From Hypanus sabinus (taxonomy: Eukaryota), in NCBI RefSeq assembly GCF_030144855.1, contig NC_082716.1:80476001-80540000 (forward strand): a DNA stretch of 64,000 bases, in the 5' to 3' direction. Below, piece after piece: positions 5,461 through 63,683 of this stretch. The notes under the pieces were generated by a model. The model made no database searches. It had not been told where the DNA came from and saw only the letters and a list, made by a program, of their open reading frames with translations. Position 1 is the first letter of the stretch. Every line of letters begins with the position of its first letter. The position numbers and the translations under genes are program-made.

Positions 5461-6297
5461 TAATAGTTGAAGGAGAACACTTTCAGTGTCCAAGTTAATG
5501 CAGCCCACTATGAAGTGCATGGGGCGAGAGGCTGGAAATGCAGCAAAAGATTGGAAAACTTAATAAAGCTGATCTACCTCAACCCCATATTATTCCTGTT
5601 CCTGTTCCCCCAACATCAATGAAATAAAACATGCCAGTATTCCCCTCTGAACTTCAAGCATATCTAATACACCCTTCTGCAAACTTGTTCCAGGAATTAT
5701 GTAACTTCAACCTACATTCCAAAGATTTATTTTTCAATTTTGGGTGTTTTCCTTGATTTGGCCATTTTATAGCACTCTTTCCAAATGAGCAAATGGGAGC
5801 AAAATTGGTCTTACTACAGATACCAGCATGTTTAGTTGCAGCCTGATCAAGTGGTCAATTACACAAACTCAGCTCCTGCACTGTTTTTTAAATATATTTT
5901 GGGAGGGAGAAGCAATATTAAAATTAAAAATTCCAGGAGAACAAACATATTAGGTGAATTTTATAGGCATTGGTAACATTAATGACAGAATATGGAAATG
6001 CATGCATTGCTCTTTGCAAGATCAGGAACTAAAATGCAGGCAGCTAAGCTGAGGGCATCTGATATCAAGAAATTTTCTGCACTAGTGATCCCAACCCTAC
6101 CAATCCCTTAGAACATTTCTAGCCCCATCCCATTGCTGTTTTTAAGCATCTGCAGTATTCAACTGTGAAACTACTCCTGTTGCCAGGCATATACTGGTTT
6201 CAGCCTTAAACAGTAACAAGTGACCAGCTAATCTGTTTTAGTTCTGCTGACTGAAAAATCAATTAGTATAAATTCTTTGTTCAGTAGTTATTAAAAA

Positions 6298-6500
6298 TAT
6301 TATGTTTGTGGTACTGGGAAGCTGGATGACTGTGAATAACACATACAAGAGACAGAGAGGTGAAGAACAAATGTTCAACTGTTCATTTTACTTGCAAGTC
6401 ATCTAGCTAAAATGCCCTCTCATGTTACATTCAGTACATTGCACACATGGGAAGTTTGATAGCAACTTGCAAGGGTTAAAGTATACATCAATACATAACG
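6298..6500 (-). repeat. 3' LTR of the EIF4ENIF1-carrying element
   Basis: tattatgtttgtggtactgggaag...atacataacg is collinear with 9601-9802 (roughly 70-75% by eye). It is followed on + by tatctctccgccctt, the PPT complement. Confidence 0.85.
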
Positions 6501-6759
6501 TATCTCTCCGCCCTTATTTTAAAGGTTTCTATGCCTTCCCACAGAGACCAGCCACTGAGCTATTAAGATTCAATAGAGTAATCATCCAATACAACCAATA
6601 ACAAAAGACATTTTTTTAAACTGGGGAGAGAGGGTAGACCGCCTCTATTCCCAGACATAATCCTGTGAGGGTATTGACAACTTGGGGATAACGCTAAGGT
6701 AATTTTATCTCTTGGTGGTGTATGTATAGATCTTGGCTTGGATACTGCATTGTTAGTAG

Positions 6760-8436
6760 GGTCACCTCCGAAAGCACAGGTGACAGGCCTTGCCGATTAA
6801 AGATTGCTGTGTGATGATTCTGACCACCAAGCAGGTCACCTAGAATATCTGGGAATGGAGGCCACATTACAGGGGGAGGTAGAATTTTGGGGGGGTTTGA
6901 TTGCAAGGGTAAGGTTCCACTTGCCTTCATACTGTTAATTAGCTTATTGAAGGAAGTCATATCTGGTCTGTTGAGCAACACACACAAAATGCTGGAGGAA
7001 CTCAGCAGACCAGGCAGAATCTATGGAAAAGAGTACAGTCGACATTTCAGGCCGAAACCCTTTGGCAGGACTTTTCTTCGGTCTTTTATTTGTACAAGAC
7101 CAGATGGTGCAGTTAGAGTCTGTTCCAGATGTTCCACCATAAATGGGGTGGTAAGCTTCGTCTCAGATTCCATTTTGAGACCTTTCAGTTCAGCTTCCAT
7201 CTCTTCCACAGACAAACCACTCCAGACTGTGACCTCTCCTTTAGCTTCACATCCACATTTACTTTTTGCAGTATTCCAAAATATCAACTTTTTTACTGAT
7301 GTCCTTATAAGTTTCCTCATGATGGAACGGGTACTGGGATCATCAGCTCCAGACTAGAAAATCGCTCGTTCTTGAGGGGTAGACTGCAAGCTACTGGACC
7401 GACTGACTACCTGGTCTACTTAAGTTGCTTAACAACCATTGATAGAATCAGCTGGATAATATTGACCATTCACCAAGCACCTCTTCAATCATCGATGGTA
7501 GTTGAAGAACTCTTTTCTCCATATTAAAGAATTCACTGAAGTTCGCCGATGCAAGTTCAGGCTGGACTGCTTTCTGGGTCAGCTTCTTGGTCAGCTTCTG
7601 ATGCAAGAACAGTAGGTTCTCTGCTTGGGCTACGCCATTACATCCTACACCTTCTTTAATGGTCTGTGATCGTTTCCTCCGCCTCTTTGCCTGACTCGGA
7701 TCCTCCAGCAGCATGTTACCATCATAGCCTGTCAGCTCTATTGTTTCTGATTGACTAGCGAGGCCAGCAGAAAACCATTCTGCTTCCTCTTCAGTAAAGT
7801 AGTCACATCACCTCCACTGACTAAAATGCATCCGCCATCACCAAACTCTCTCCTAAAGTGCTTTTCCTTGCAGCCTCATCCCCTTCCTTCTCTAGCATCT
7901 CTATCACCAAAGTTTTTGTCTCTACCATCCTAATCAATGGTTCTTGATGTTATTATGCACCCACTTCCAATCCTCCACTGGCAGCCCAACCCATGAATAT
8001 TTTTATTCTATTTTCCAATGGGCTTCCAGATCCTCAACTACTAGGAGTATTGGTCACATGACAGCTATGACTACAGCTTTGGCACTGAGGACTGAGTACA
8101 ACATCATGATCTTTTTTTTATTCTCTCTCATGGATTTGTAATTCTTCACTTGAGAATTGCCCTCTCCAAATTTGAAAGATAGTCCTTCTTAGTGCCCCCC
8201 CGTGGTGAATTCCTGCCAGAATTCAGATACAAGGATGCATGCCATTTGTCCAGGTCCCAGATGCCTTCACTGTCATATTTTTCCAAAAGACTTGCTGGTC
8301 TCTGCATTGTATATGGGCACTCTTTGATTTCCAGCAGCTTTTCCACAGAATATCTATGTGGTTTCTTTGTGCCATACATTTTTATTGTATCGTTTCATTG
8401 ATCTTTTTCTTCAATCCGTCGTTCTGTTTTATCCAT
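6760..8436 (-). pseudogene. EIF4ENIF1: Processed (intronless) retrocopy of the 5' half of EIF4ENIF1 / 4E-T, with stops and frameshifts
   Basis: Collinear matches to 4E-T: ATG at 8436; PHRYSVEKLLEIKE..QRPASLLEKYDSEGIWDLDKWHASLY; DVVLSPQ; RIGSG; FRREFGD; TEEEAEWFSAGLASQSETIELTGYD; SMIEEVLGE; LSVEEMEAELKGLK..TPFMVEHLEQTL; DMTSFNKLINSMKASGTLP. No introns between blocks. Several CGA-to-TGA-type stops. The 3' boundary is approximate (about 6700-6770). Confidence 0.92.
6975..7071 (-). mobile_element. About 97-bp PLE 3'-end fragment inserted in the EIF4ENIF1 retrocopy
   Basis: gcaacacacacaaaatgctggaggaactcagc...cagtcgacatttcaggccgaaaccctttggcaggac. The 4E-T homology resumes on both sides. Confidence 0.8.
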
Positions 8437-8479
8437 GCCACCACCGGGGGTCAGCAGCTGCCTCTGCTGAGGCTCTGGG

Positions 8480-9350
8480 CTTACCAGTGATTCCTTTCAT
8501 TCTGCCCAGTTCTCCATTGAACACTTCCACTGAAACAGATAAAACATGCAAAGCTTCTTCAACCACAGAGGGAGAGTCACTCAGTCCATCCTTCTTGTCA
8601 CTCCTTATTCACGTTTCTTTTTGTTGTTCCAAAAGTCATTTTTCTTTATTATAGTGTTTTTGGTTGACAGTGTCTTTTTTTCTTTTACAGGTGCGTTCAG
8701 TCTGCCCCTTTTTGCCACAGTTTTAGCAATCTAAATCCTTACACCAGCATTCTTTTGTTGAGTGCCTAGTTTTATCACAACAGTAACGCTGATTACCAAT
8801 AGGTGTCTTATTTTTAAAGTCAGTAGAAACTTTATGAACTTGGGAAGATGGCTCAAAAGCTATACTTCTTCAGTTGCCAGCTCCATAGCTGTACTAATCT
8901 CAACTGTCTTCTGTAATGATAGTCTGAATTCTGTAAGCAAATGTTTCCAAATTGCCTCAGTGTAGACCACATACGAGTCTATCATGTACCGCGTTATTCA
9001 GCCGCTGCCCAAAATCAGTGTTCAGACAATTGCTTCAGCACCACATCAAATGTGAAATAGAATTGCCTTCCCCTTGATTCCTTTCCTGAAATTTACTCTC
9101 TCAGCAATAAAGACTTAGGTAAATAGTGGTCCTTTATGACTTGAACTATGTCCTCATCAGATTCATCACCAAGTTTAGCATGTTGCACTAGACTGCATAA
9201 TAAATTAAACGTTTTTGTACCCATCAGTCAGAAAAGTTGGAACATAATTATCTGAAATTTGACTTGCCAGTGCAAAATACTCATATCTTTCTGTATATGA
9301 ACTCCATTGCTTTGTCATTTTGTCATACGACCCCATAATTCTAAACATTG
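8480..9350 (-). pseudogene. Decayed Gypsy gag plus a short pre-RT linker, protease missing
   Basis: Minus translation with lesions: WSSYTERYEYF..TKTFNLLCSLVQ..DRLVCGL..EAIWKHLLTE..LQKTVEISTAMELA, a decayed zinc-knuckle region, then EEALHVLSVSVEVFNGELGRMKGITGK. Confidence 0.8.
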
Positions 9351-9600
9351 TTACTATTTTCCAACAATCACGTTCCAGAAAAGGTAACTAGACTTATCCG
9401 TCACTCTCTCTCATTTTCTTTTTAACCATTCTGTTCTCATTCTCTCCCCTCGATTTCTCTCACCAGGCTTCGTGAGGCCATTTTGTTTTTGCTCATCATC
9501 ATGACACAGCGGTAGACCGCCAGCATTGCACATGGACTTTACTTGCCAAGAGGAACAAAACAATAAATATCGTGCGAGGACTTGTCACCGCATCACAAGT

Positions 9601-9802
9601 TGTTATGTTTGTAGTACTGGGAAGCCGGGTGGCCATGAATAACAACCACGGGGAACAGAGAGGTGAGGAACAAACGTGCTGCTGTTTATTTTACATGTAA
9701 GTCATCTACCCAGAATGCCCTCTCACATTACGTTCAGTACATAACATACAGGGATGCATGATAACACCCTGTCAGGTTCAAAATGTATGTCACTACATAA
9801 AA
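9601..9802 (-). repeat. 5' LTR of the EIF4ENIF1-carrying element
   Basis: tgttatgtttgtagtactgggaag...actacataaaa, a direct repeat of 6298-6500. Confidence 0.85.
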
Positions 9803-10859
9803 AAAGAATCTATTTGCACTTTTAGCAAGCTATTGCTCAGTCTGGATTTTTGCAAACAGAAGAATTTTACCAACCTCCAAGAAAGTAATCCCCGAGGAAA
9901 GCCCTGACCTTCGAATGTCACTGCTTTTAACTCTGCAATCCTAGATATCGAGCAACAGTGACATCAAGGATAGGCAGCCACAATTTTAATCTCATATTTT
10001 AAACATTTTGCCAAGCATGAAATAATGATTAGAACATTTATGCAGGCTAAAGTGACAGAAAGTAAAATTTTAATTCCTCAACTCCTTCAAAAATTAGATT
10101 GTTAGAAAAGTACCATGAATAGCCCATTGTGAAAGCAGTGAACAAAGTTAACATGCCATTGAAAACTTTAGTTCTGTGCAACAAAAGCCACAGTTTTTAG
10201 TGCACTGAAAAAAATGGCTCATAGCTTAGAGCTTGTCTCGTTCAGTTAAGTTGAGAAAGCTTCAAAACATCACAGCCCATGGAAAATTGCAAATCTAATT
10301 TGAGTTAAAACAAATAGGTTTTCTCAACATTTTTTATTATAAATATTACTACATGACTCAGAGGGCAAACAGAGTTGAGCTGGAAATCAGCCAGCCAGTT
10401 ATGCCCAGTACATTAGGGAGACCAAAGGTCTCTGATTACTATATGACCAAGCCATTATCTGAAATGTTGTGCGCAAAATTGCAGTTTGGCTTGTCCAGGG
10501 AAGTTTGGATTCCCAAGGGGCTCTTTGTGGAATTGGGAAGCTTTCAAGTTAAATTGTTGGAACTGAGTTCCCCAGGAGTGCAGTATGTATGAAAGTTTTG
10601 ATTTGACAAACTGAATTTCTTAATACACTGATTACTCTCTCTCAAGTCCAAGCATAAACAATGTTGAGAAGCTATCACTGCAATACTTGGGTCATTTTAC
10701 ATATAGTACAAAATTACAAGCATCTGGCAGAATTCTCTTCCAATAAATCACAATGTGCCTTTCAAAGTCCAACTCCAGGACTATCATCAGAGTGTCAATG
10801 CCTGGCAAACGGGCAACTCATTCTTATTAATGCTACCTATAGATAAACTAGTTAGGCCA

Positions 10860-13559: not shown

Positions 13560-13700
13560 CTGTGTCCTAACGAAGGGTCTCGGCCCGAAACATTGACTGC
13601 TCGTTTCAACAGATGCTGCCCAACCTGCTGAGTTCATCCAGCTTGTTTGTATGTGTTGATTTGACCACAGCATTTGCAGTGTACTTTGTGTTTATCAAAT
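13560..13700 (+). mobile_element. PLE 3' end with hammerhead-like motif
   Basis: cctaacgaagggtctcggcccgaaacattgactg...gatgctgcccaacctgctgagttcatccagc. Confidence 0.7.
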
Positions 13701-37844: not shown

Positions 37845-39856
37845 GAAGATGAGACCGGGAAATTAATGGTAGGGGACATGGAGATGGCGGAAATGTTGAA
37901 CAAATATTTTGTATCAGTTTTTACAGTAGAGGACACTCAAAATATCCCAACACTGGATAAACAAGGGGCTCTAGGGGGATAGAAGCTAACTACGATTCAA
38001 ATCACCAAGGAAATGGTACTTGATAAATTAATGGGACTGAAGGTGGATAAATCCCCTGGACCGGATGGCTTGCATCCTAGGGTCTTAAGGGAAGTGGCGG
38101 TCGGGATTGTGGATGCATTAGTGATAACTTTTCAAAACTCGCTGGACTCGGCAATGGTCCCGGCAGATTGGAAAAATGCTAATGTAACTCCTTTATTTAA
38201 AAAGGGCAATAGACAGAAGGCTGGGAATTATAGGCCAGTTAGCCTAACATCTGTGGTTGGCAAAATGTTGAAATCGATAATTAAGGAAACAGTAACAGGG
38301 CATTTGGATAAACATAGCTTAATAGGACAAAGTCAGCATGGTTTTACAAAAGGGAAGTCATGTTTGACAAATTTGTTGGAGTTCTTTGAGGACATAACAT
38401 ATAGGGTAGATAAAGGGGAACCAGTGGATGTGGTGTATTTGGACTTCCAAAAGGCATTTGACAAGGTGCCACACCAAAGATTATTACTTAAAGTAAAAAA
38501 TCATGGGATTGGGAGTAATATTCTGGCATGGGTGGAGGATTGGCTTTCTAACAGAAAACAGAGAGTTGGGATAAATGGTTTATTCTCAGACTGGCAGTTG
38601 GTGACTAGTGGTGTTCCGCAGGGGTCGGTGTTGGGACCCCAACTCTTTACAATCTATATTAATGATTTGGAGAAAGGGACTAAGTGCAACGTATCGAAGT
38701 TTGCTGATGACACAAAGATGGGAGGGAGTGTAATGAGTGCGGAGGACATTGAAACCCTGCAGGGGGACATAGATAGGCTGAGTGATTGGGCAGACATTTG
38801 GCAAATGAAATATGATACTGACAAGTGTGAGGTCTTGTACTTTGGCAGGAAAAATTATAGAGCAAGTTATTATCTAAATGGAGAGAAACTGGAAGGTGCT
38901 TCTGTTCAAAGGGATCTGGGGGTCCTGGTGCAGGGAACACAAAAAGTTAGTATGCAAGTGCAGCAGGTGGTCAAGAAGGCCAATGGAATGCTGGCTTTTA
39001 TTGCTAAGGGGATGGAGTATAAGAACAGGGAGGTCTTACTGCAGTTGTACCGGGTATTGGTGAGACCACACCTGGAGTACTGCGTGCAGTTCTGGTGTCC
39101 ATATTTAAGAAAGGACATACTGGCTCTTGAGGCAGTGCAGAGAAGGTTCACTAGGTTAATTCCAGGGATGGGTGGGTTGATGTATGATGAGAGGTTGAGT
39201 AGATTGGGACTCTACTCATTGGAGTTCCAAAGAATGAGAGGCGATCTTATTGAAACATAAAAGATTGTGAAGGGGCTTGATCGGGTGGATGCGGGGAGAA
39301 TGTTCCCAATGATGGGTGAAACTAGGACTAGGGGGCATAATCTTAAAATAAGGGGATGCCGTTCCAGGACTGAGATGAGGAGAAATTTCTTCACTCAGAG
39401 GGTAGTGGGGCTGTGGAATTTACTGCCCCAGAGAGCTGTGGAAGCTACTACACTCAATAAATTCAAAACGGAGATAGACATTTTCCTGGATAAAAATGGC
39501 ATTAGGGGATATGGTGAGCGAGCAGGTAAGTGGACATGAGGCTAGGTTTAGATCAGCCATGTGATCTCCTGGGCCAGTTTTTGATAGCCTGGATGGGTCA
39601 GAGAGGAATTTTCCAGATTTTTTCTCCTCAATTGGCAAATCGTTTATTTTTCCCCCGGGTGATCACATGGGTATGGGTGGGATGAATAATAAAATAAAAT
39701 GGGCAGCATGGTGCCCTGTTGGTTGGCACTGTTGCCTTGTGGGATTCGGTGAAAACTAGAGTTAAGATTGGATCAGCCATGATCTTGTTGAATGGCGGAG
39801 CAGGCTTGAGGGGCCGATTGGCCTACTCCTGCTCCTATCTCTTATGTTCTTATGTT
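37845..39856 (+). mobile_element. Young 5'-truncated CR1-type LINE (RT and 3' UTR)
   Basis: ORF 38013-39260 continues in frame to 39539. Motifs KSPGPDGLHPRVL, YLDFQKAFDKVPH, GVPQGSVLGP, KFADD. Ends cttatgttcttatgtt. Confidence 0.95.
38013..39539 (+). pseudogene. CR1 ORF2 reverse transcriptase portion with a single in-frame TAA at 39258-39260
   Basis: GAA ACA TAA AAG ATT (expected ETYKI). The frame is otherwise open for about 500 codons; no endonuclease domain. Confidence 0.9.
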
Positions 39857-40007: not shown

Positions 40008-40223
40008 TGTAGCGGTGTGCTACACGCAGCGCTAAAATTACGACACAGAGTCGGTAACTGCAGTCGAAGGAAAAAAACTTTATTCGAAAACTTCAGCCTC
40101 ACTTTTAAGCCTCCCTCAACCGGCCCCCCATGGCGCAGAGGCTCCAAAGTTCTGTGCTCGCAAACCCCCGTAGGCTATCTAATTGTGAGTCGGTTCGGAT
40201 GCACCAGGAAATGGGTCGCCACA
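40008..40223 (-). repeat. 3' LTR
   Basis: TG..CA ends; preceded on minus by the poly-G PPT (about 40229-40242). Confidence 0.95.
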
Positions 40224-43200
40224 TAACACCCCCCCCCCCCCCAGAACCGGCGATACACCCCCCAATGTCCACAGTCTGGGCCAGAACCTGCTTGGGAGGT
40301 CGGCCTCTGCGCCGAGGCGCCGGAAACTCGGCCGGTTGCGCCAGGTCCACATGGGCCGGTTTGAGGCGGTCCACCGTGAAAACCTCCTCTTTCCCCCCAA
40401 CATCCAGCACGAACGTGGACCCGTTGTTCCGGAGCACCATAAACGGCCCCTCGTATGGCCGCTGCAGCGGCGGCCGATGCCCACCCCTTCGTACAAACAG
40501 AAACTTACAGTTCTGTAGGTCTTTGGGTACGCAGGTCGGGTGCCGCCCGTGCTGTGAAGTGGGTATGGGGGCCAGGTTACCGAGCTTCTCGCGTAGTCTG
40601 CCCAGGACTGCTGCGGGTTCTTCCTCTTGCCCCCTTGGGGCTGGTAGGAACTCCCCGGGGACGACCAGGGGCGCGCCGTATACCAACTCGGCCGACGAGG
40701 CGTGCAGGTCGTCTTTGGGTGCCGTGCGGATGCCGAGTAGGACCCAGGGAAGCTCGTCCGCCCAGGTGGCTCCTCGCAGGCGGGCCATGAGGGTCGTCTT
40801 CAGGTGACGGTGGAAACGCTCCACTAGCCCGTTCGACTGTGGGTGGTAGGCAGTTGTGTGGTGCAGCTGAGTCCCCAAAAGGCTGGCCATAGCTGACCAC
40901 AGGTTGGAGGTGAACTGGGCGCCTCTGTCGGAGGTAATGTGGGCTGGTACACCAAAGCGAGATATCCAGGTGGCGATCAGGGCTCGGGCGCAAAATTCGG
41001 AGGTGGTGTCGGTGAGCGGGACCGCCTCTGGCCATCTTGTGAACCGGTCCACGATAGTCAGGAGGTGCCGCGCTCCGTGCGACACTGGCAGGGGGACCAC
41101 GATATCCACATGAATGTGGTCGAAACGCCGGTGGGCGGGATGGAACTGCTGCGGTGGGGCTTTGGTGTGCCCCTGCACCTTGGCCGTCTGGCATTGCATG
41201 CACGTTTTGGCCCATTCACTGACCTGTTTGCGGAGTCCGTGCCAAACGAACCTGCTGGAAACCATCCGGACAGTTGTCCGGATGGAGGGATGCGCCAAGT
41301 TATGAATGGAGTCGAAAACGCGGCGCCGCCATGCTGTCGGGACGACTGGACGGGGCTGGCCGGTGGCGACGTCACAGAGTAGGGTCCTCTCACCTGGGCC
41401 CACGGGGAGGTCCTGGAGCTGCAGACCGGAGACTGCGGTTCTGTAACTCCGAATCTCCTCATCCGCCTGCTGCGCCTCTGCCAGTGCCTCAAAGTCTACC
41501 CCTTGGGAAAGGGCATGAACTGTAGGGCGAGAGAGCGCATCCGCCACGACATTGTCCTTACCCGAGACGTGCCGGACATCCGTCGTGTATTCAGAGATGT
41601 AGGACAGGTGGCGTTGCTGGCAGGACGACCAGGGGTCGGACGCTTTCGTAAACGCAAAGGTAAGCGGTTTGTGGTCCGTGAACGCGGTGAAGGGCCGACC
41701 TTCTAGGAAGTACCTGAAATGCCGGATTGCCAGGTAGAGCGCCAACAGTTCCCGGTCGAAAGCACTGTACTTAAGCTCGGGTGGTCGCAGGTGTTTGCTG
41801 AAAAACGCCAGGGGTTGCCAGCGACCTGCGATGAGTTGCTCCAGCACCCCACCGACTGCCGTGTTTGATGCGTCCACTGTGAGGGCGGTAGGGGTGTCCA
41901 TTCTGGGATGAACTAGCATTGCGGCGTCCGCCAAAGCTTCCTTCGTTTGAACGAAAGCGGCGGCAGACTCTTCGTCCCAGGTAATGTCCTTGCTCGGACC
42001 CGACATCAGGGCGAACAGGGGGCGCATGATCCGGGCAGCTGAAGGGAGGAAGCGGCGGTAGAAATTGACCATCCCTACGAATTCCTGAAGGCCTTTGATC
42101 GTGGTGGGTCGGGGAAAGAGGCGGACCGCATCTACCTTAGCGGGCAGAGGGGTTGCCCCGTCTTTAGTAATCCTGTGGCCCAGCAAGTCAATGGTATCGA
42201 GTCCAAACTGGCATTTGGCGGGGTTGATTGTAAGACCGTACTCACTCAGTCGGGCGCAGAGTTGACGGAGGTGGGACAGATGCTCCTGACGACTGCTGCT
42301 GGCTATGAGGATGTCATCCAAATAGATGAACGCGAAGTCCAGGTCCCGTCCCACCGCGTCCATTAACCGCTGGAACGTCTGTGCGGCATTCTTCAGGCCG
42401 AACGGCATGCGGAGGAACTCGAAAAGGCCGAAAGGGGTGATGAGAGCCGTTTTGGGGACGTCGTCAGGATGCATCGGGATTTGATGGTACCCTCGGACGA
42501 GATCTACCTTGCAGAAGATCCGTGCGCCGTGCAGGTTTGCTGCAAAGTCCTGAATGTGCGGCACAGGGTAGCGGTCCGGTGTGGTAGCCTCGTTCAGCCT
42601 GCGGTAGTCGCCGCACGGTCTCCAGCCCCCCGTCGCTTTGGGCACCATGTGCAGGGGGGAGGCCCATGGGCTGTCGGACCGCCGGATGATCCCCAATTCC
42701 TCCATCCTCTGGAACTCCTCCTTCGCCAGTCGGAGCTTGTCCGGGGGAAGTCGCCGAGCGCGGGCGTGGAGGGGTGGTCCCTGGGTCGGGATGTGGTGCT
42801 GTACGCCGTGCCTGGGCATGGCCGCTGTGAACTGTGGTGCCAGAACCGATGGGAACTCCGCCAGGACCCTGGTGAAGTCGTTGTCGGACAGCGTGATGGA
42901 GCCGAGGTGAGGGGCTGGCAACTGGGCTGCACCCAGGGAGAACGTCTGAAAGGTCTCGGCGTGTACCAGTCTCTTCCTGGGCAGGTCGACCAGTAGGCTG
43001 TGAGCCTGCAAAAAATCCGCACCCAGAAGCGGTTGGGCTACGGCGGCCAGTGTGAAGTCCCACGTGAACTGGCTGAAGCCGAACTGTAGCTGCACCTGAC
43101 GGGTGCCATAGGTCCTTACTGAGCTGCCATTCACGGCCCTCAGGGGGGGACCCGGTGCCCTGCTGCGGGTGTCGTAACTTGTCGGAGGTAAAACGCTGAT

Positions 43201-43251
43201 CTCAGCCCCAGTATCGACCAAAAACCGGCGTCCCGACCTTCTATCCCACAC
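40105..43251 (-). CDS. Gypsy pol reading frame (protease, RT, RNase H, integrase), 1048 codons, no ATG start
   Basis: [10 protein letters not shown] (PR), [20 protein letters not shown] (RT), DAS..AFFS/FTDHKPL (RH), [23 protein letters not shown] (IN), GPF motif. Runs through the PPT into the LTR. Confidence 0.93.
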
Positions 43252-43261
43252 TTACCAGCCA

Positions 43262-43948
43262 TCAGCGGCGGCTGGCCCTGGCGTTTCCCGGGAACTTGCA
43301 GGGCGGGCGACAACGGCGGGCTTCTGCGCCCCACCGCTGGTGGTAGAAGCACCAGTGTTCATTGGGCCGGGGGTTGGCGGGCTCTGCGGCCGGGCCTGGA
43401 CTGGTTTGCTGCCGGGAGCGTGGCTGGGAGATCTGTGCGATGGACACCCCGCTCACCTTTTTGGCGTTCCACAGCAAGTCCGCCCGGGCTGCCACCTTCT
43501 GGGGGTCACTGAAATCCGCGTCGGACAGCAGCAGGCGTATGTCCTCGGGCAGCTGCTCCAGGAATGCCTGCTCAAACATGAGGCATGTGTGTCTGTCGGC
43601 CAGAGACAACATCTCATTCATTAAAGCCGATGGAGGTCTGTCGCCCAAGCCATCCAGGTGCAGTAAGCTGGCAGCCCGCTCGCGCCGTGAGAGTCCGAAA
43701 GTCCTGAGGAGCAGGGCTTTGAATTCCGTGTACTTGCCGTCTGCCGGGGGCGACTGTACAAACTCCGCGACCTGGGCCGCTGTGTCCTGGTCGAGGGAGC
43801 TCACCACGTAGTAGTAGCGGGTGTCTTCTGAGGTGATCTGGCGAACGTGGAATTGGGCTTCGGCTTGCTGGAACCATAGGTCCGGGCGCTGTGTCCAGAA
43901 ACCCGGCAGTTTCAACGAAACCGCATGAACAGAGGCGGCGTCGGTCAT
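43262..43948 (-). CDS. Gypsy gag (228 aa from the ATG at 43948)
   Basis: MTDAASVHAVSLKLPGFWTQRPDLWFQQAEAQF..., C-terminal WCFYHQRWGAEARRCRPPC motif. Confidence 0.9.
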   Translation of the reverse strand: MTDAASVHAVSLKLPGFWTQRPDLWFQQAEAQFHVRQITSEDTRYYYVVSSLDQDTAAQVAEFVQSPPADGKYTEFKALLLRTFGLSRRERAASLLHLDGLGDRPPSALMNEMLSLADRHTCLMFEQAFLEQLPEDIRLLLSDADFSDPQKVAARADLLWNAKKVSGVSIAQISQPRSRQQTSPGPAAEPANPRPNEHWCFYHQRWGAEARRCRPPCKFPGNARASRR

Positions 43949-43972
43949 TTCTGGTCCAAAAATCGTTTGGAC

Positions 43973-43986
43973 CGTCGGGGTCACCA
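43973..43986 (-). promoter_or_regulatory. Primer-binding site complementary to the tRNA-Trp 3' end
   Basis: Minus strand TGGTGACCCCGACG, the complement of the recalled vertebrate tRNA-Trp(CCA) end ..CACGTCGGGGTCACCA (14 nt match). Confidence 0.8.
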
Positions 43987-43988
43987 AT

Positions 43989-51275: not shown

Positions 51276-52388
51276 ATGGCTTTTACTCATAAGGAATATA
51301 CTGCTCCTCAGGGAACGCTGGTGAAGCCCTACTACTGGCTTCACTTCACTGAAAACTGTTTGAAGTGCCCATATCACATCAAAACAGGAGAAGAAGCTCG
51401 CGTGTCGTACATGGAATTTTATGAATCATTTGGATTTCCTTATGCTCAGCCACAGCGTGGGAGTCATCTGCTTTTTTATGAACTGAAGTTATCATCAGGT
51501 ACCTTAGTGCAGAAGGGACAAGTATCCAGCTGTACTTTACACCAACTACACCCAGAATCAATATTCTTTGATACCGATGGTTATCTGGATGCACTCATGT
51601 ATTCATATGAAAACATTGCTTATATCACCATATACTCCAATTACACCCCATGCAACGAAAGAGCCCAATATTGCATAAGCAAAATGTATGATTTTTTAAT
51701 AAATTATCCAAGTACGAGATTAGATATCTATTTTTCTGCACTCTATCATACCGATGATTCCAATGTTGAATCAGGATGGAACAAGAAAGCTCTCCATTAC
51801 TTAGCAGCATTCTGGCCCAGGGTAACCATCAACCCAATCAGTAGCTGGACATGGCTGAATATTCTTCACCGATTTGTGAATGGTGTGCCTTGGACAGCAC
51901 TTTACAACCCAGTTTTACCTGAGAGAGCCCATGCTGATCTCATCAATGCCCATCAGATCGCTACCATCACTGGTGTGAACCCTTCCTACATTGATGCCAT
52001 ACCTCAGAAACCAGTTCAGGTCACGCCGCATAAGCAGCAACATTTTAAACCAGAAGGCATGAACATGTACAAGTCTTCACAAGCATCACTTCCCACTATA
52101 AACAAAATGCCATTAATGGCTCAGTATCAGCCTTATATGAGTCTTCCAAACCTACCAGCATTTCACTGGTCAATGTACCCTCTGAAACCACAGAAGACCA
52201 AGCCAAGAAATGTAGTGAGACACCTGAACATGCCCAACAAAGAGTGGGAAAAACCTACAACCCCATCACCTCACAATGTGCAAGTTACTGAAGTAGTGGA
52301 AATTCTTGAAGCTCCTGCAACGAAGAAATCAGGCAATTCAAACAGACGGGGAAAGAGCAGCAAAAGGACAAAATCTAGGAGGAAATAG
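51276..52388 (+). CDS. APOBEC4: APOBEC4 (AID/APOBEC family zinc-dependent deaminase fold), 370 aa, single coding exon
   Basis: GTLVKPYYWL..CPYHIKTGEEARVS..FGFPY..FYELKLSSGTLVQKG..HPES..GYLD..YSNYTPCNERAQYCISKMY..FSALYHT..WPRV..KPRNVVRHLNMP and a basic C-terminus. Collinear with recalled human APOBEC4 (367 aa); no stops. Confidence 0.96.
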   Translation: MAFTHKEYTAPQGTLVKPYYWLHFTENCLKCPYHIKTGEEARVSYMEFYESFGFPYAQPQRGSHLLFYELKLSSGTLVQKGQVSSCTLHQLHPESIFFDTDGYLDALMYSYENIAYITIYSNYTPCNERAQYCISKMYDFLINYPSTRLDIYFSALYHTDDSNVESGWNKKALHYLAAFWPRVTINPISSWTWLNILHRFVNGVPWTALYNPVLPERAHADLINAHQIATITGVNPSYIDAIPQKPVQVTPHKQQHFKPEGMNMYKSSQASLPTINKMPLMAQYQPYMSLPNLPAFHWSMYPLKPQKTKPRNVVRHLNMPNKEWEKPTTPSPHNVQVTEVVEILEAPATKKSGNSNRRGKSSKRTKSRRK

Positions 52389-60889: not shown

Positions 60890-62430
60890 AATAAAATATT
60901 TTGACAAACCTGACCAGTTTCCCTCCACCACCACCCTCCATCTGGCAAAACTGGTCTTCACACTCAACAACTTCTCTTTTGGCTCGCATGGGCTTCAGCT
61001 ATCCCTGCCTATTATATGGCTATATTAAACAGTCCATATTCCAAGCCTTCACTGGTAATGCTCCCCAACTTTCTCTGCACTATATTGACAACTGTATCCG
61101 GCACTGCTTATGTACCAATGATGAACTTGTCAAATTCATCAACTTTGCATCCAGCCTCCACCCTGCCATCAAATTCACTTGGTCCCTTTCTGACACCTCT
61201 TCTCCTTCTTAATCTGTTACCATCATTGGCTTCTGATATCTTTTTATCAGTATCAGCCATCATCTTAGCTGCACTTCATCACATGCCATCACTCGTAAAA
61301 ATACCATGGTCTTTTCTTAGTTCCTCTATCCCTGCCACATCTGGTCCCAGGATGAGGCTTTCCTTTGCAGTACAGAGATTTCCTCCTCCTTCAAAGAACA
61401 GGATTTCTCTTCCCACTTTATTGATACTGCACTCACCTGCATCTCCTCCATTCCTGGGCATCCCCCTCATCTCATCTTCCTGTTGTCTTTTTCAGGGATA
61501 GAGTTCTTGTCCATGCCTAACACTCATAAGCATTCAAATCTAGCACATCAGCTTCCTCAACGTCTGCCATTGTCAATGAAATCCTACCACTGAACTATCT
61601 TTTACCTTCTCCCCACAAGGAGAAACCTCTAACTCACTTATCCACTGATCTCCCTCCTGGCACTTGACCCTGCAAGTAGAAGTTCTACACCCGTCCATTC
61701 AGTTCCACCATCACCCACCATTCAGGACCCCAAACAGTCTTTCCAGGTGATGCAATACTTCACTTGCAAATCTGTTAGGATCATCTACCGTACGTACTGC
61801 TCCCAGTGCAGCGTCCTCAACATCAGCAAGACCTGATATAGATTAGGGGACTGCTTTTTGAGCGCCTTGGCTCCATCCACAACAAGATCTCCTGGTGGCC
61901 AACTATTTTAGTTGATATCCCCATTCCCATATGTTGATTCATTGCTCCTCTATTTTGTTTGGAGGAGTAGCACTTCACCTGGATACTCTCCAATCTGATG
62001 GTTGGAATACCTACCTGATAATTTCTCCCCACTTCTCTCTCATTCGCCATTCTGGCTTCCCCATATCCTCTTCTCTTCACCCGCCTATCACCTCCCCCTG
62101 CATCCCCTCCTCCTTCCCATTCTCCCATGGCTCACTGTCCTCCAGCAGATTCCTTCTTCTCCAGCCCTTACCATTTCCACCAGACCTCCCAGCTTCTCAT
62201 GTTAGCCTCTTCCATGCCCACCTACCTCCCCCATCACATGGCTTCACCCATCACTTTCAAGCTTGCACTCCTTCCTCTCCCCACCTTATTCTGACTTCTT
62301 CTCTCTTGCTTTCCAGTCGTGAAGGGTCTTGGCCAAAACAACTGTTTATTCTCCTTTCCACAGATGCTGCCTGATGAGCTTAGTTCCTTCAGCATTTTGC
62401 ATGCCAGTCTGGATTTCCAGCATTTAGAGA
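60890..62430 (+). mobile_element. PLE fragment: RT C-terminal part, GIY-YIG remnants and 3' end
   Basis: LHYIDNCI (YIDD-like), FINFASSLHPAIKFTWSLS, and acttcacttgcaaatctgttaggatcatctac (TC.S..IIY, GIY-YIG). Ends gatgctgcctgatgagcttagttccttcagcattttg. Confidence 0.8.
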
Positions 62431-63483: not shown

Positions 63484-63683
63484 NNNNNNNNNNNNNNNNN
63501 NNNNNNNNNNNNNNNNNNNNNNNNNNNNNNNNNNNNNNNNNNNNNNNNNNNNNNNNNNNNNNNNNNNNNNNNNNNNNNNNNNNNNNNNNNNNNNNNNNNN
63601 NNNNNNNNNNNNNNNNNNNNNNNNNNNNNNNNNNNNNNNNNNNNNNNNNNNNNNNNNNNNNNNNNNNNNNNNNNNNNNNNNNN
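63484..63683. other. Assembly gap (200 N)
   Basis: A run of exactly 200 N. Confidence 1.

What the first reader, a model, noticed from the sequence alone, without database searches (positions are those of the whole stretch)
6298..9802. LTR retrotransposon that captured a spliced host EIF4ENIF1 (4E-T) mRNA in place of pol
Seen: the order on minus is 5' LTR, PBS-like site, gag, linker, about 1.6 kb of intronless 4E-T from just upstream of its ATG, element 3' UTR, PPT, 3' LTR. There is no poly(A) tail at the end of the 4E-T part, so this is not an ordinary LINE-made processed pseudogene. Established: LTR-mediated retroposition by template switching during reverse transcription is documented in animals, but such captures are far rarer than LINE retrocopies. 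Inference: the chimera kept its cis signals and could have been mobilised in trans as a cargo-carrying subfamily. I do not know of this capture being described.
Basis: partly seen in the sequence, partly recalled or inferred. Interest (0 to 1): 0.85.

Follow-up and report, generated by a model that had tools for sequence, protein, structure and literature searches.

The report
Ray jumping gene carrying 4E-T fragment
A decayed LTR retrotransposon in a stingray-like genome has its enzyme genes replaced by an intron-free copy of the first half of the host translation-repressor gene 4E-T, a clear cartilaginous-fish example of a known but seldom seen way in which jumping genes pick up host messenger RNAs.

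Summary
On the minus strand, 9797-6298 is one LTR element. It has two ~197-nt LTRs (TG..CA ends, 77% identical), a perfect 6-bp target duplication (TTTTTA), and a purine tract before the 3' LTR. It also holds decayed gag pieces and a ~50-nt remnant of the pol leader.

Between these, 8479-6785 is 4E-T (EIF4ENIF1) cDNA. It runs from about 40 nt of 5'UTR through the ATG to about codon 545. At least nine exon joins are nucleotide-exact against the sawfish gene, where the same exons span 31 kb. The 3' half of the mRNA is absent, there is no poly(A), and the cargo has no duplication of its own. That rules out a LINE-made pseudogene and fits two reverse-transcriptase template switches.

The copy is dead, with at least 10 stops and at least 8 frame changes. 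Short-read contigs from several related species bridge both junctions and both LTR/flank borders, so it is old and not an assembly artefact. The same runs hold about 5-10 further intronless 4E-T copies, some abutting the same pol leader.

The mechanism is published (Tan et al. 2016). The scan has already noted similar captures (myosin, RBM25) elsewhere in this genome. Verdict: new member of a known kind.

The parts
9798..9803 (-). Target-site duplication, upstream copy (TTTTTA)
   Evidence: Read from sequence. It is identical to 6292-6297.
9601..9797 (-). 5' LTR (197 nt, TGTAG...ACATAACA)
   Evidence: Direct repeat and alignment. K2P distance to the 3' LTR is 0.29. The LTR is multi-copy in related genomes.
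9578..9595 (-). PBS-like site, 5 nt after the LTR (TGATGCGGTGAC...)
   Evidence: Position only. Its likeness to the complement of a tRNA-His 3' end is from memory and untested. No tRNA genes are available in the window or L001.
8639..9348 (-). Decayed gag, split over three frames, with a CCHC-type knuckle remnant near 8735-8680
   Evidence: Translations. No Pfam, Atlas or word-search hit. The region is multi-copy in related genomes at roughly 20-80 times flank depth.
8530..8681 (-). End-of-gag / pre-protease block, the most repeated part of the family
   Evidence: Depth is 200-300 times single copy. Dozens of contigs match exactly 8530-8679 and then read differently below 8530.
8527..8530 (-). 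Internal deletion junction: the protease region of relatives is missing here
   Evidence: Loose ends on both sides (at 8530 'before', and at 8521/8527 'behind') show that relatives continue with other sequence. The same joint is seen in 4 contigs of X5 and 1 of X15.
8480..8529 (-). Remnant of the pol leader (reads ..EVFNGELGRMKGITGK)
   Evidence: Depth is 30-70 times single copy. Relatives read QEVLKKQAE before it and LAVKPDTTPK after it (loose ends).
6785..8479 (-). Captured 4E-T (EIF4ENIF1) cDNA: ~40 nt of 5'UTR, ATG at 8436, through about codon 545. It is intronless, with at least 10 stops and at least 8 frame changes
   Evidence: Pfam PF10477. tblastn to batoid 4E-T. Eleven exon blocks of the Pristis gene are colinear, with exact joins. 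Homology ends at 6785 against three references.
8437..8479 (-). 4E-T 5'UTR piece and the element/cargo junction (junction at 8479 +/- 3)
   Evidence: This is the only single-copy stretch in the area. 8467-8437 matches Pristis L001 2305-2336 at 24/31, with CpG-decay type differences. Pristis has an acceptor (cag) directly before GCATG.
8332..8352 (-). eIF4E-binding motif YxxxxLphi, still readable (YSVEKLL)
   Evidence: Translation.
6973..7083 (-). Nested 111-nt fragment of a very high-copy interspersed repeat inside the cargo
   Evidence: Four other copies occur in the window, and depth in related genomes is in the millions. It is absent from the Pristis exon, from the skate mRNA and from a parental-type contig in X1/X16/X19.
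6496..6784 (-). Element 3' region, with a polypurine tract (AAAATAAGGGCGGAGAGA) at 6520-6503
   Evidence: No 4E-T homology. It is multi-copy in related genomes, and some relatives lack 6531-6701. The purine tract abuts the 3' LTR.
6298..6495 (-). 3' LTR (198 nt, TGTAT...ACATAATA)
6292..6297 (-). Target-site duplication, downstream copy (TTTTTA)

Best explanation
This is an old, dead, non-autonomous LTR retrotransposon, probably of Ty3/Gypsy type. Its protease-RT-RNase H-integrase region has been replaced by cDNA of the 5' half of the host 4E-T (EIF4ENIF1) mRNA.

The most likely origin is inferred, not shown. During minus-strand DNA synthesis inside a virus-like particle, reverse transcriptase copied the element's 3' region. 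It then switched to a co-packaged spliced 4E-T mRNA at about codon 545 and ran to, or near, that mRNA's 5' end. It then switched back to the element RNA at the pol leader and finished through gag.

The chimera kept its LTRs, its primer-side sequences and its purine tract. It integrated with a 6-bp duplication. It, or a sister copy, was copied several more times by enzymes supplied by autonomous relatives.

This copy has since decayed. Its LTRs are 23% different, and its cargo carries many stops and frameshifts plus a nested repeat. No function or expression is detectable.
For: Shown:
- Paired LTRs with TG..CA ends, a perfect 6-bp TSD and a purine tract.
- Cargo with Pfam EIF4E-T hits, colinear with batoid 4E-T aa 1 to ~545.
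- At least 9 exon joins that are nucleotide-exact, where the Pristis gene has gt..ag introns spread over 31 kb.
- Likely removal of the 5'UTR intron as well.
- Homology that stops at 6785 in mid-CDS, with no A-run.
- A cargo bordered upstream by a pol-leader remnant whose relatives read on as pol, and downstream by the element's 3' region.
- Contigs from other organisms that bridge 6298, 9797, the 8479 junction and the 6785 junction.
- 8-14 contigs per run that cover 4E-T exons 1-2 and are intronless, with joints 8417->8479/8485 to the same pol leader in 1-4 contigs per run.

Against: - No autonomous partner sequence was obtained. The switch points therefore cannot be checked for microsimilarity, and the superfamily is not proven.
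- gag gave no Pfam, Atlas or word-search hit.
- The PBS is not verified.
- The other 4E-T-bearing copies were seen only as summaries of short contigs. Their LTRs, flanks and TSDs are unknown, so segmental duplication is not excluded.
- Most other copies differ from this one across 8418-8478, so their relation to this copy is unresolved (derivative, founder or separate rearrangement).
- The 5'UTR match to Pristis is short (24/31).
Confidence: 0.85

Rival explanations
1. An ordinary LINE-made processed pseudogene of 4E-T landed inside a pre-existing LTR element. Later deletions removed its 3' half, its poly(A) and most of pol.
For: LINE reverse transcriptases are present in the window. There is a weak 6-of-8 likeness between TCACTGGT before the cargo and TCACCTGT after it.
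Against: - LINE copies are 5'-truncated and 3'-complete. This one is the reverse, with its 5'UTR present and its 3' half absent.
- There is no A-run at 6785.
- The sequence after the cargo does not continue the relatives' pol sequence. At least two further precise deletions would be needed.
- Several other copies share the pol-leader/4E-T adjacency.
Confidence: 0.04
2. Retrovirus-style transduction. An element inserted upstream of, or within, EIF4ENIF1. A read-through or deletion-fused transcript was packaged, and one template switch restored the 3' end.
For: This is the classical route for oncogene capture by retroviruses (established knowledge). It would also give a cargo flanked by element sequence without poly(A).
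Against: The cargo begins in the first (5'UTR) exon, within about 40 nt of the ATG. There is no promoter or intergenic DNA, and every intron is removed. A first exon has no acceptor to be spliced to. The upstream junction lies inside the pol leader, not at a splice donor or LTR end.
Confidence: 0.06
3. DNA-level chimera. A free-standing 4E-T retrocopy and an LTR element were joined by non-homologous repair or gene conversion. The extra copies arose by segmental duplication.
For: The flanks of the other copies are unknown. Copy number is low, at about 5-10.
Against: The orientation is the same, and pol is replaced exactly between the retained cis signals. Two clean junctions and the TSD lie around the whole unit. 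The same genome holds other element/cargo chimeras of the same design according to scan notes, which argues for a recurrent RT-based process.
Confidence: 0.04
4. Assembly artefact that joins unrelated repeats.
For: The region is repeat-rich.
Against: Independent short-read contigs bridge the key borders:
- Organism A at ~100% identity (8402-8830, 7556-8281).
- Organisms F, G, H, I, B and D bridge the 8479 junction.
- Organisms F and G bridge the 6785 junction and both LTR/flank borders.
Confidence: 0.01

Closest known systems
LTR-mediated retrocopies (Tan et al. 2016, Genome Res, PMC5131818)
   Same: An intronless host cDNA lies between discontinuous parts of one LTR retrotransposon. It is 3'-truncated, with no poly(A) and no TSD of its own. 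The proposed origin is template switching. Such copies are documented in vertebrates (zebrafish, chicken, mouse, human).
   Different: This one is in a cartilaginous fish. It is much older (LTR K2P 0.29), and microsimilarity at the switch points could not be tested. It appears to have been copied further as a small family, which that paper does not emphasise for vertebrates.
Other cargo-carrying LTR elements noted by this scan in the same genome (myosin heavy chain, RBM25, RABEP1/CIN85; notes s1-175148, s1-213469, s1-223198, s1-213470)
   Same: Same genome and same design: an LTR element with pol replaced by spliced host cDNA. The myosin chimera is reported as present in several stingrays and devil rays.
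   Different: The cargo differs. I could not test whether the carrier element is the same family, because the look-up by sequence was blank.
Acutely transforming retroviruses and maize Bs1 (host gene transduction by LTR elements; from established knowledge)
   Same: A defective LTR element keeps its cis signals and gag, loses pol, carries host cDNA, and is mobilised in trans.
   Different: There is no sign that the cargo was expressed or selected. In this copy the cargo is out of frame with the pol leader and is full of stops.
LINE-mediated processed pseudogenes
   Same: An intronless copy of a host mRNA, now a pseudogene.
   Different: It is 3'-truncated instead of 5'-truncated. It has no poly(A) and no cargo TSD, and it is embedded in an LTR element.

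Membership tests
LTR retrotransposon (structural definition) | Two direct long terminal repeats with TG..CA ends | tested here: met
   9797-9601 and 6495-6298, TGTAG..ACA / TGTAT..ATA, 77% identical over 195 nt.
LTR retrotransposon (structural definition) | Target-site duplication of 4-6 bp flanking the pair | tested here: met
   TTTTTA at 9803-9798 and 6297-6292. The sequence is A/T-rich, so it carries less weight than 6 random bases.
LTR retrotransposon (structural definition) | Primer-binding site next to the 5' LTR and polypurine tract next to the 3' LTR | tested here: inconclusive
   The purine tract AAAATAAGGGCGGAGAGA ends 7 nt before the 3' LTR. The PBS has no TGG start, and its likeness to a tRNA-His site is from memory only. 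There were no tRNA genes to compare with.
LTR retrotransposon (structural definition) | gag coding region | tested here: inconclusive
   Broken ORF pieces with a CX2CX4QX4C remnant. No Pfam, Atlas or word-search hit.
Ty3/Gypsy superfamily | pol order PR-RT-RH-IN and RT phylogeny | not testable with these tools
   pol is absent from this copy. Only 30-letter loose ends of relatives were visible, reading QEVLKKQAEVFNGELGRMKGITGKLAVKPDTTPK. That this is Gypsy-like rests on my memory.
LTR-mediated retrocopy (Tan et al. 2016) | Intronless host cDNA | tested here: met
   At least 9 exact exon joins against the Pristis gene L001, whose introns are 0.7-8 kb.
LTR-mediated retrocopy (Tan et al. 2016) | Flanked on both sides by discontinuous parts of one LTR element, in the same orientation | tested here: met
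   A pol-leader remnant lies upstream, and the element's 3' region, PPT and LTR lie downstream.
LTR-mediated retrocopy (Tan et al. 2016) | No poly(A) and no cargo TSD; often 3'-truncated | tested here: met
   The cargo ends at about codon 545 of ~950, with no A-run at 6785.
LTR-mediated retrocopy (Tan et al. 2016) | Microsimilarity at the switch points | not testable with these tools
   This needs the autonomous element and this species' own 4E-T mRNA. Neither could be fetched (searches returned no DNA).
LINE-mediated processed pseudogene | Complete 3' end with poly(A), and a TSD around the cDNA | tested here: not met
   The 3' half is absent, there is no A-run, and there is no convincing flanking repeat.
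EIF4E-T / 4E-T (Pfam PF10477) | Sequence match above the Pfam gathering score | tested here: met
   42.5 and 56 bits against a cutoff of 28.5. The best relatives are batoid 4E-T proteins.
EIF4E-T / 4E-T (Pfam PF10477) | Intact reading frame (a functional gene) | tested here: not met
   At least 10 in-frame stops, at least 8 frame changes, internal deletions and a nested repeat.

The most novel reading that the evidence does not exclude
The cargo was not a passenger. The captured half of 4E-T holds the eIF4E-binding motif and the region that, in 4E-T, binds the helicase DDX6 and drives P-body localisation (established knowledge). Ty3-type elements are known to assemble in P-bodies. The chimera may once have expressed this fragment, and this may have helped its own, or its helper's, RNA packaging or translational control. 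That would explain why this particular chimera was copied several times.
Probability: 0.04. Interest if true: 0.8.

Novelty: new member of a known kind. Interest (0 to 1): 0.42.

Why it matters
This is a clean, well-bounded vertebrate example of LTR-mediated gene capture outside the species where it has been described. It has nucleotide-exact exon joins and is shared across several ray species. There are signs that the chimera itself multiplied.

Together with the other captures noted in this genome, it suggests that one or a few ray LTR families were unusually prone to picking up host mRNAs. That would make rays a useful system for studying how often such events seed new genes. The copy itself is a dead pseudogene with no evident function.

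Tried and rejected
- **gag classification failed.** Pfam on eight pieces gave nothing. The Atlas gave nothing on two pieces. There was no likeness to the intact Gypsy gag elsewhere in the window. Word-index searches with the junction piece and with the 82-aa 4E-T piece found nothing.
- **PDB search** with the 4E-T N-terminal piece found nothing.
- **Fetching the EIF4ENIF1 locus of stingrays and devil rays** (Hemitrygon, Hypanus, Mobula) returned no DNA because the files were too large. Pristis was used instead.
- **Skate mRNA contigs** (L002, L005) lack the matching first exons, so they did not help with the 5'UTR.
- **Protein-level placement** of the retrocopy among batoid 4E-T proteins was not discriminating.
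- **RNA evidence:** no run on record as RNA holds the stretch. This is no evidence of silence.
- **Weak 4E-T-like protein match from 6785 to ~6700**. I rejected it as cargo because three DNA references all stop aligning at 6786.
- **Joint 6530->6702**. I first read it as evidence for chimeric sister copies. I now read it as indel variation in the element's own 3' region.
- **Scan look-ups** by sequence and by free words were blank.
Full report
**The object**

On the minus strand the window holds a 3.5-kb unit bounded by two direct repeats. After correcting the ends by eye and by script, the 5' LTR is 9797-9601 and the 3' LTR is 6495-6298. Both start with TGTA and end with A(C/T)A.

They are 77% identical over 195 aligned bases (32 transitions, 13 transversions, K2P 0.29). 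The six bases outside each LTR are the same, TTTTTA (9803-9798 and 6297-6292).

A purine-rich tract (AAAATAAGGGCGGAGAGA, 6520-6503) lies just before the 3' LTR. The site after the 5' LTR has no TGG. Its likeness to the complement of a tRNA-His 3' end rests only on my memory and was not tested. No tRNA gene was available to compare with.

**Element-derived coding remains**

From about 9348 to 8639 the three minus frames hold broken ORF pieces. They read like a retrotransposon gag and end in a decayed CX2CX4(H>Q)X4C knuckle.

None of the pieces hits Pfam, the Atlas or the intact Gypsy gag elsewhere in the window. 'gag' is therefore my reading, not a database result.

Contigs of related genomes laid on the stretch show that this region and the LTRs are multi-copy. 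They reach roughly 20 to more than 150 times the depth of the flanks.

At fine scale the most repeated block is 8530-8679. Dozens of contigs match it and then continue differently below 8530. A second set of contigs matches 8474-8527 and reads differently above 8527.

Translating the loose-end consensus, these relatives read QEVLKKQAE-VFNGELGRMKGITGK-LAVKPDTTPK. From memory, this is the stretch between protease and reverse transcriptase in vertebrate Ty3/Gypsy pol proteins.

So this copy has an internal deletion junction at 8530/8527, where the protease region is missing. It keeps only about 50 nt of the pol leader (8529-8480). RT, RNase H and integrase are absent.

**The cargo**

Pieces of the minus-strand translation between 8394 and 6697 hit Pfam EIF4E-T (PF10477) at 5.7e-11 and 4.9e-15, above the gathering score.

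An exhaustive HMMER search with the 119-aa piece found 4E-T proteins. The best is the electric ray Narcine bancroftii, and its cluster also holds the sawfish Pristis pectinata. A word-index search with the Pristis protein (P0037) then listed 4E-T of stingrays, devil rays and skates.

tblastn shows the cargo is colinear with batoid 4E-T from residue 1 to about 545 of roughly 900-960. The eIF4E-binding motif is still readable as YSVEKLL at 8352-8332.

**Splicing**

The Pristis gene with its introns was fetched (L001, 41.7 kb). The cargo aligns to eleven blocks of it, in order, from L001 2998 to 34379. These correspond to window 8439 to 6786, at 74-92% identity.

At each of at least nine boundaries the Pristis sequence shows a donor (gt, once gc) and an acceptor (ag). 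The window sequence runs straight from one exon into the next, to the nucleotide.

In Pristis an acceptor (cag) lies directly before GCATG. In the window, the 31 nt before the ATG instead match a GC-rich stretch about 660 nt upstream in Pristis. The match is 24/31, and four of the seven differences are of CpG-decay type. This suggests the 5'UTR intron is removed as well. The match is short, so I call it suggestive.

**The two junctions**

Upstream, depth in four other genomes falls to single-copy level only between 8426 and 8473. It jumps 30-fold or more at 8474-8489.

Relatives of the element read on as pol after GGTAA (8481), while this copy reads GCCCAGAGCC.. into the 4E-T 5'UTR. The junction is therefore at 8479 +/- 3.

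Downstream, alignments to the Pristis gene and to two skate mRNA contigs all stop at 6786/6785. This lies in the middle of an exon and of the coding sequence. Unrelated sequence follows and there is no A-run.

The remaining 289 nt up to the 3' LTR are element-type sequence that is multi-copy in relatives.

The cargo thus has its 5' end but lacks its 3' half and poly(A), and it has no convincing flanking duplication of its own. That is the opposite of a LINE-made processed pseudogene. It matches the LTR-mediated retrocopies of Tan et al. 2016 (PMC5131818).

**State of the copy**

Against stingray 4E-T (Hypanus sabinus, P0176) the cargo shows at least 10 in-frame stops and at least 8 frame changes. 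It also has internal deletions around residues 350-430.

A 111-nt fragment of a very high-copy interspersed repeat is nested at 7083-6973. Four more copies of this repeat occur in the window, and its depth in related genomes is in the millions. It is absent from the Pristis exon, the skate mRNA and a parental-type contig.

In this copy the 4E-T ATG is out of frame with the pol leader. No run on record as RNA holds the stretch. That is not evidence of silence.

**Independent confirmation and age**

Organism A gives contigs that are essentially identical to the window, with 0-1 differences. They cover 7556-8281 and 8402-8830, the latter across the upstream junction.

Organisms F and G, about 2% diverged in the flanks, have contigs that run from the left flank into the 3' LTR (to 6329). 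Others run from the 5' LTR into the right flank (from 9725 and 9687). Further contigs cross the downstream junction (6301-6856) and the upstream one (8082-8559 and 8253-8517).

Organism B has a 1,323-nt contig that crosses the upstream junction at about 10% divergence. Organisms H, I and D also cover the single-copy junction stretch.

The chimera is therefore real. It is fixed and predates the split of several ray species, in line with the large LTR-LTR distance.

**Is it a family?**

In each of four genomes, 8-14 distinct contigs cover 4E-T exons 1-2 (8250-8425). Most are 13-19% different from this copy. They have no gap across the exon A/B join, where Pristis has a 4.8-kb intron.

Most of them stop matching at 8415-8417. 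One to four contigs per genome join 8417 directly to 8479 or 8485, that is, to the same pol leader, with 42-47 letters on the shorter side. The internal 8527/8530 deletion joint also occurs in further contigs (four in organism B).

So several other intronless 4E-T copies exist, perhaps 5-10 per genome, and at least some are chimeras with the same element.

I could not read these contigs themselves. Their LTRs, flanks and TSDs are unknown, so segmental duplication is not excluded. It is also unresolved whether this copy, which alone shows the 61 nt with the 5'UTR and ATG, is closer to the founder.

**Mechanism**

The best-supported reading is two template switches during minus-strand synthesis. 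The first is from the element's 3' region to 4E-T mRNA at about codon 545. The second is from at or near the mRNA's 5' end back to the element at the pol leader.

The shown steps are the anatomy, the splicing, the truncation pattern and the single integration. The inferred steps are co-packaging, the switches themselves and trans-mobilisation.

**Comparison and novelty**

The architecture and the mechanism are published for invertebrates and for zebrafish, chicken, mouse and human (PMC5131818). No paper in the searched library links EIF4ENIF1 with a retrocopy, and none describes LTR-mediated capture in rays.

The scan's own notes list sister cases in this same genome with myosin, RBM25 and RABEP1/CIN85 cargo. 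Two of the myosin cases were followed up and read the same way. I did not test those.

I therefore file this as a new member of a known kind. It has moderate interest, mainly as part of what looks like a capture-prone LTR lineage in rays.

Noticed in passing
window 51276-52388 (+): An intact 370-aa single-exon ORF of the AID/APOBEC deaminase family. Pfam gives NAD1 at 4.7e-24, APOBEC_N at 3e-19 and APOBEC4 at 7e-19. It has HPE..PCx6C-type motifs, so it is likely the host APOBEC4-like gene.
   Followed up: partly
window 40105-43987 (-): An apparently intact, GC-rich (about 61%) Ty3/Gypsy element. It has a 241-aa gag (Pfam DUF7041) followed by a 1,048-aa pol with RT, RNase H and integrase. It is unrelated in sequence to the element carrying 4E-T.
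   Followed up: partly
window 38013-39260 (+): A 415-aa ORF with a LINE-type reverse transcriptase domain (RVT_1, 1.4e-28).
   Followed up: no
window 6973-7083, 2506-2602, 1651-1731, 13564-13658, 62351-62399: A roughly 100-nt unit of an extremely abundant interspersed repeat. Summed contig depth in related genomes is in the millions. One fragment is nested in the 4E-T cargo.
   Followed up: partly
window 6531-6701: Some relatives of the element join 6530 to 6702 and lack these 171 nt. This is either an insertion in this copy or a deletion in the others, and it is unresolved.
   Followed up: no
window 63484-63683: A run of 200 N (assembly gap or masked), left as it is.
   Followed up: no
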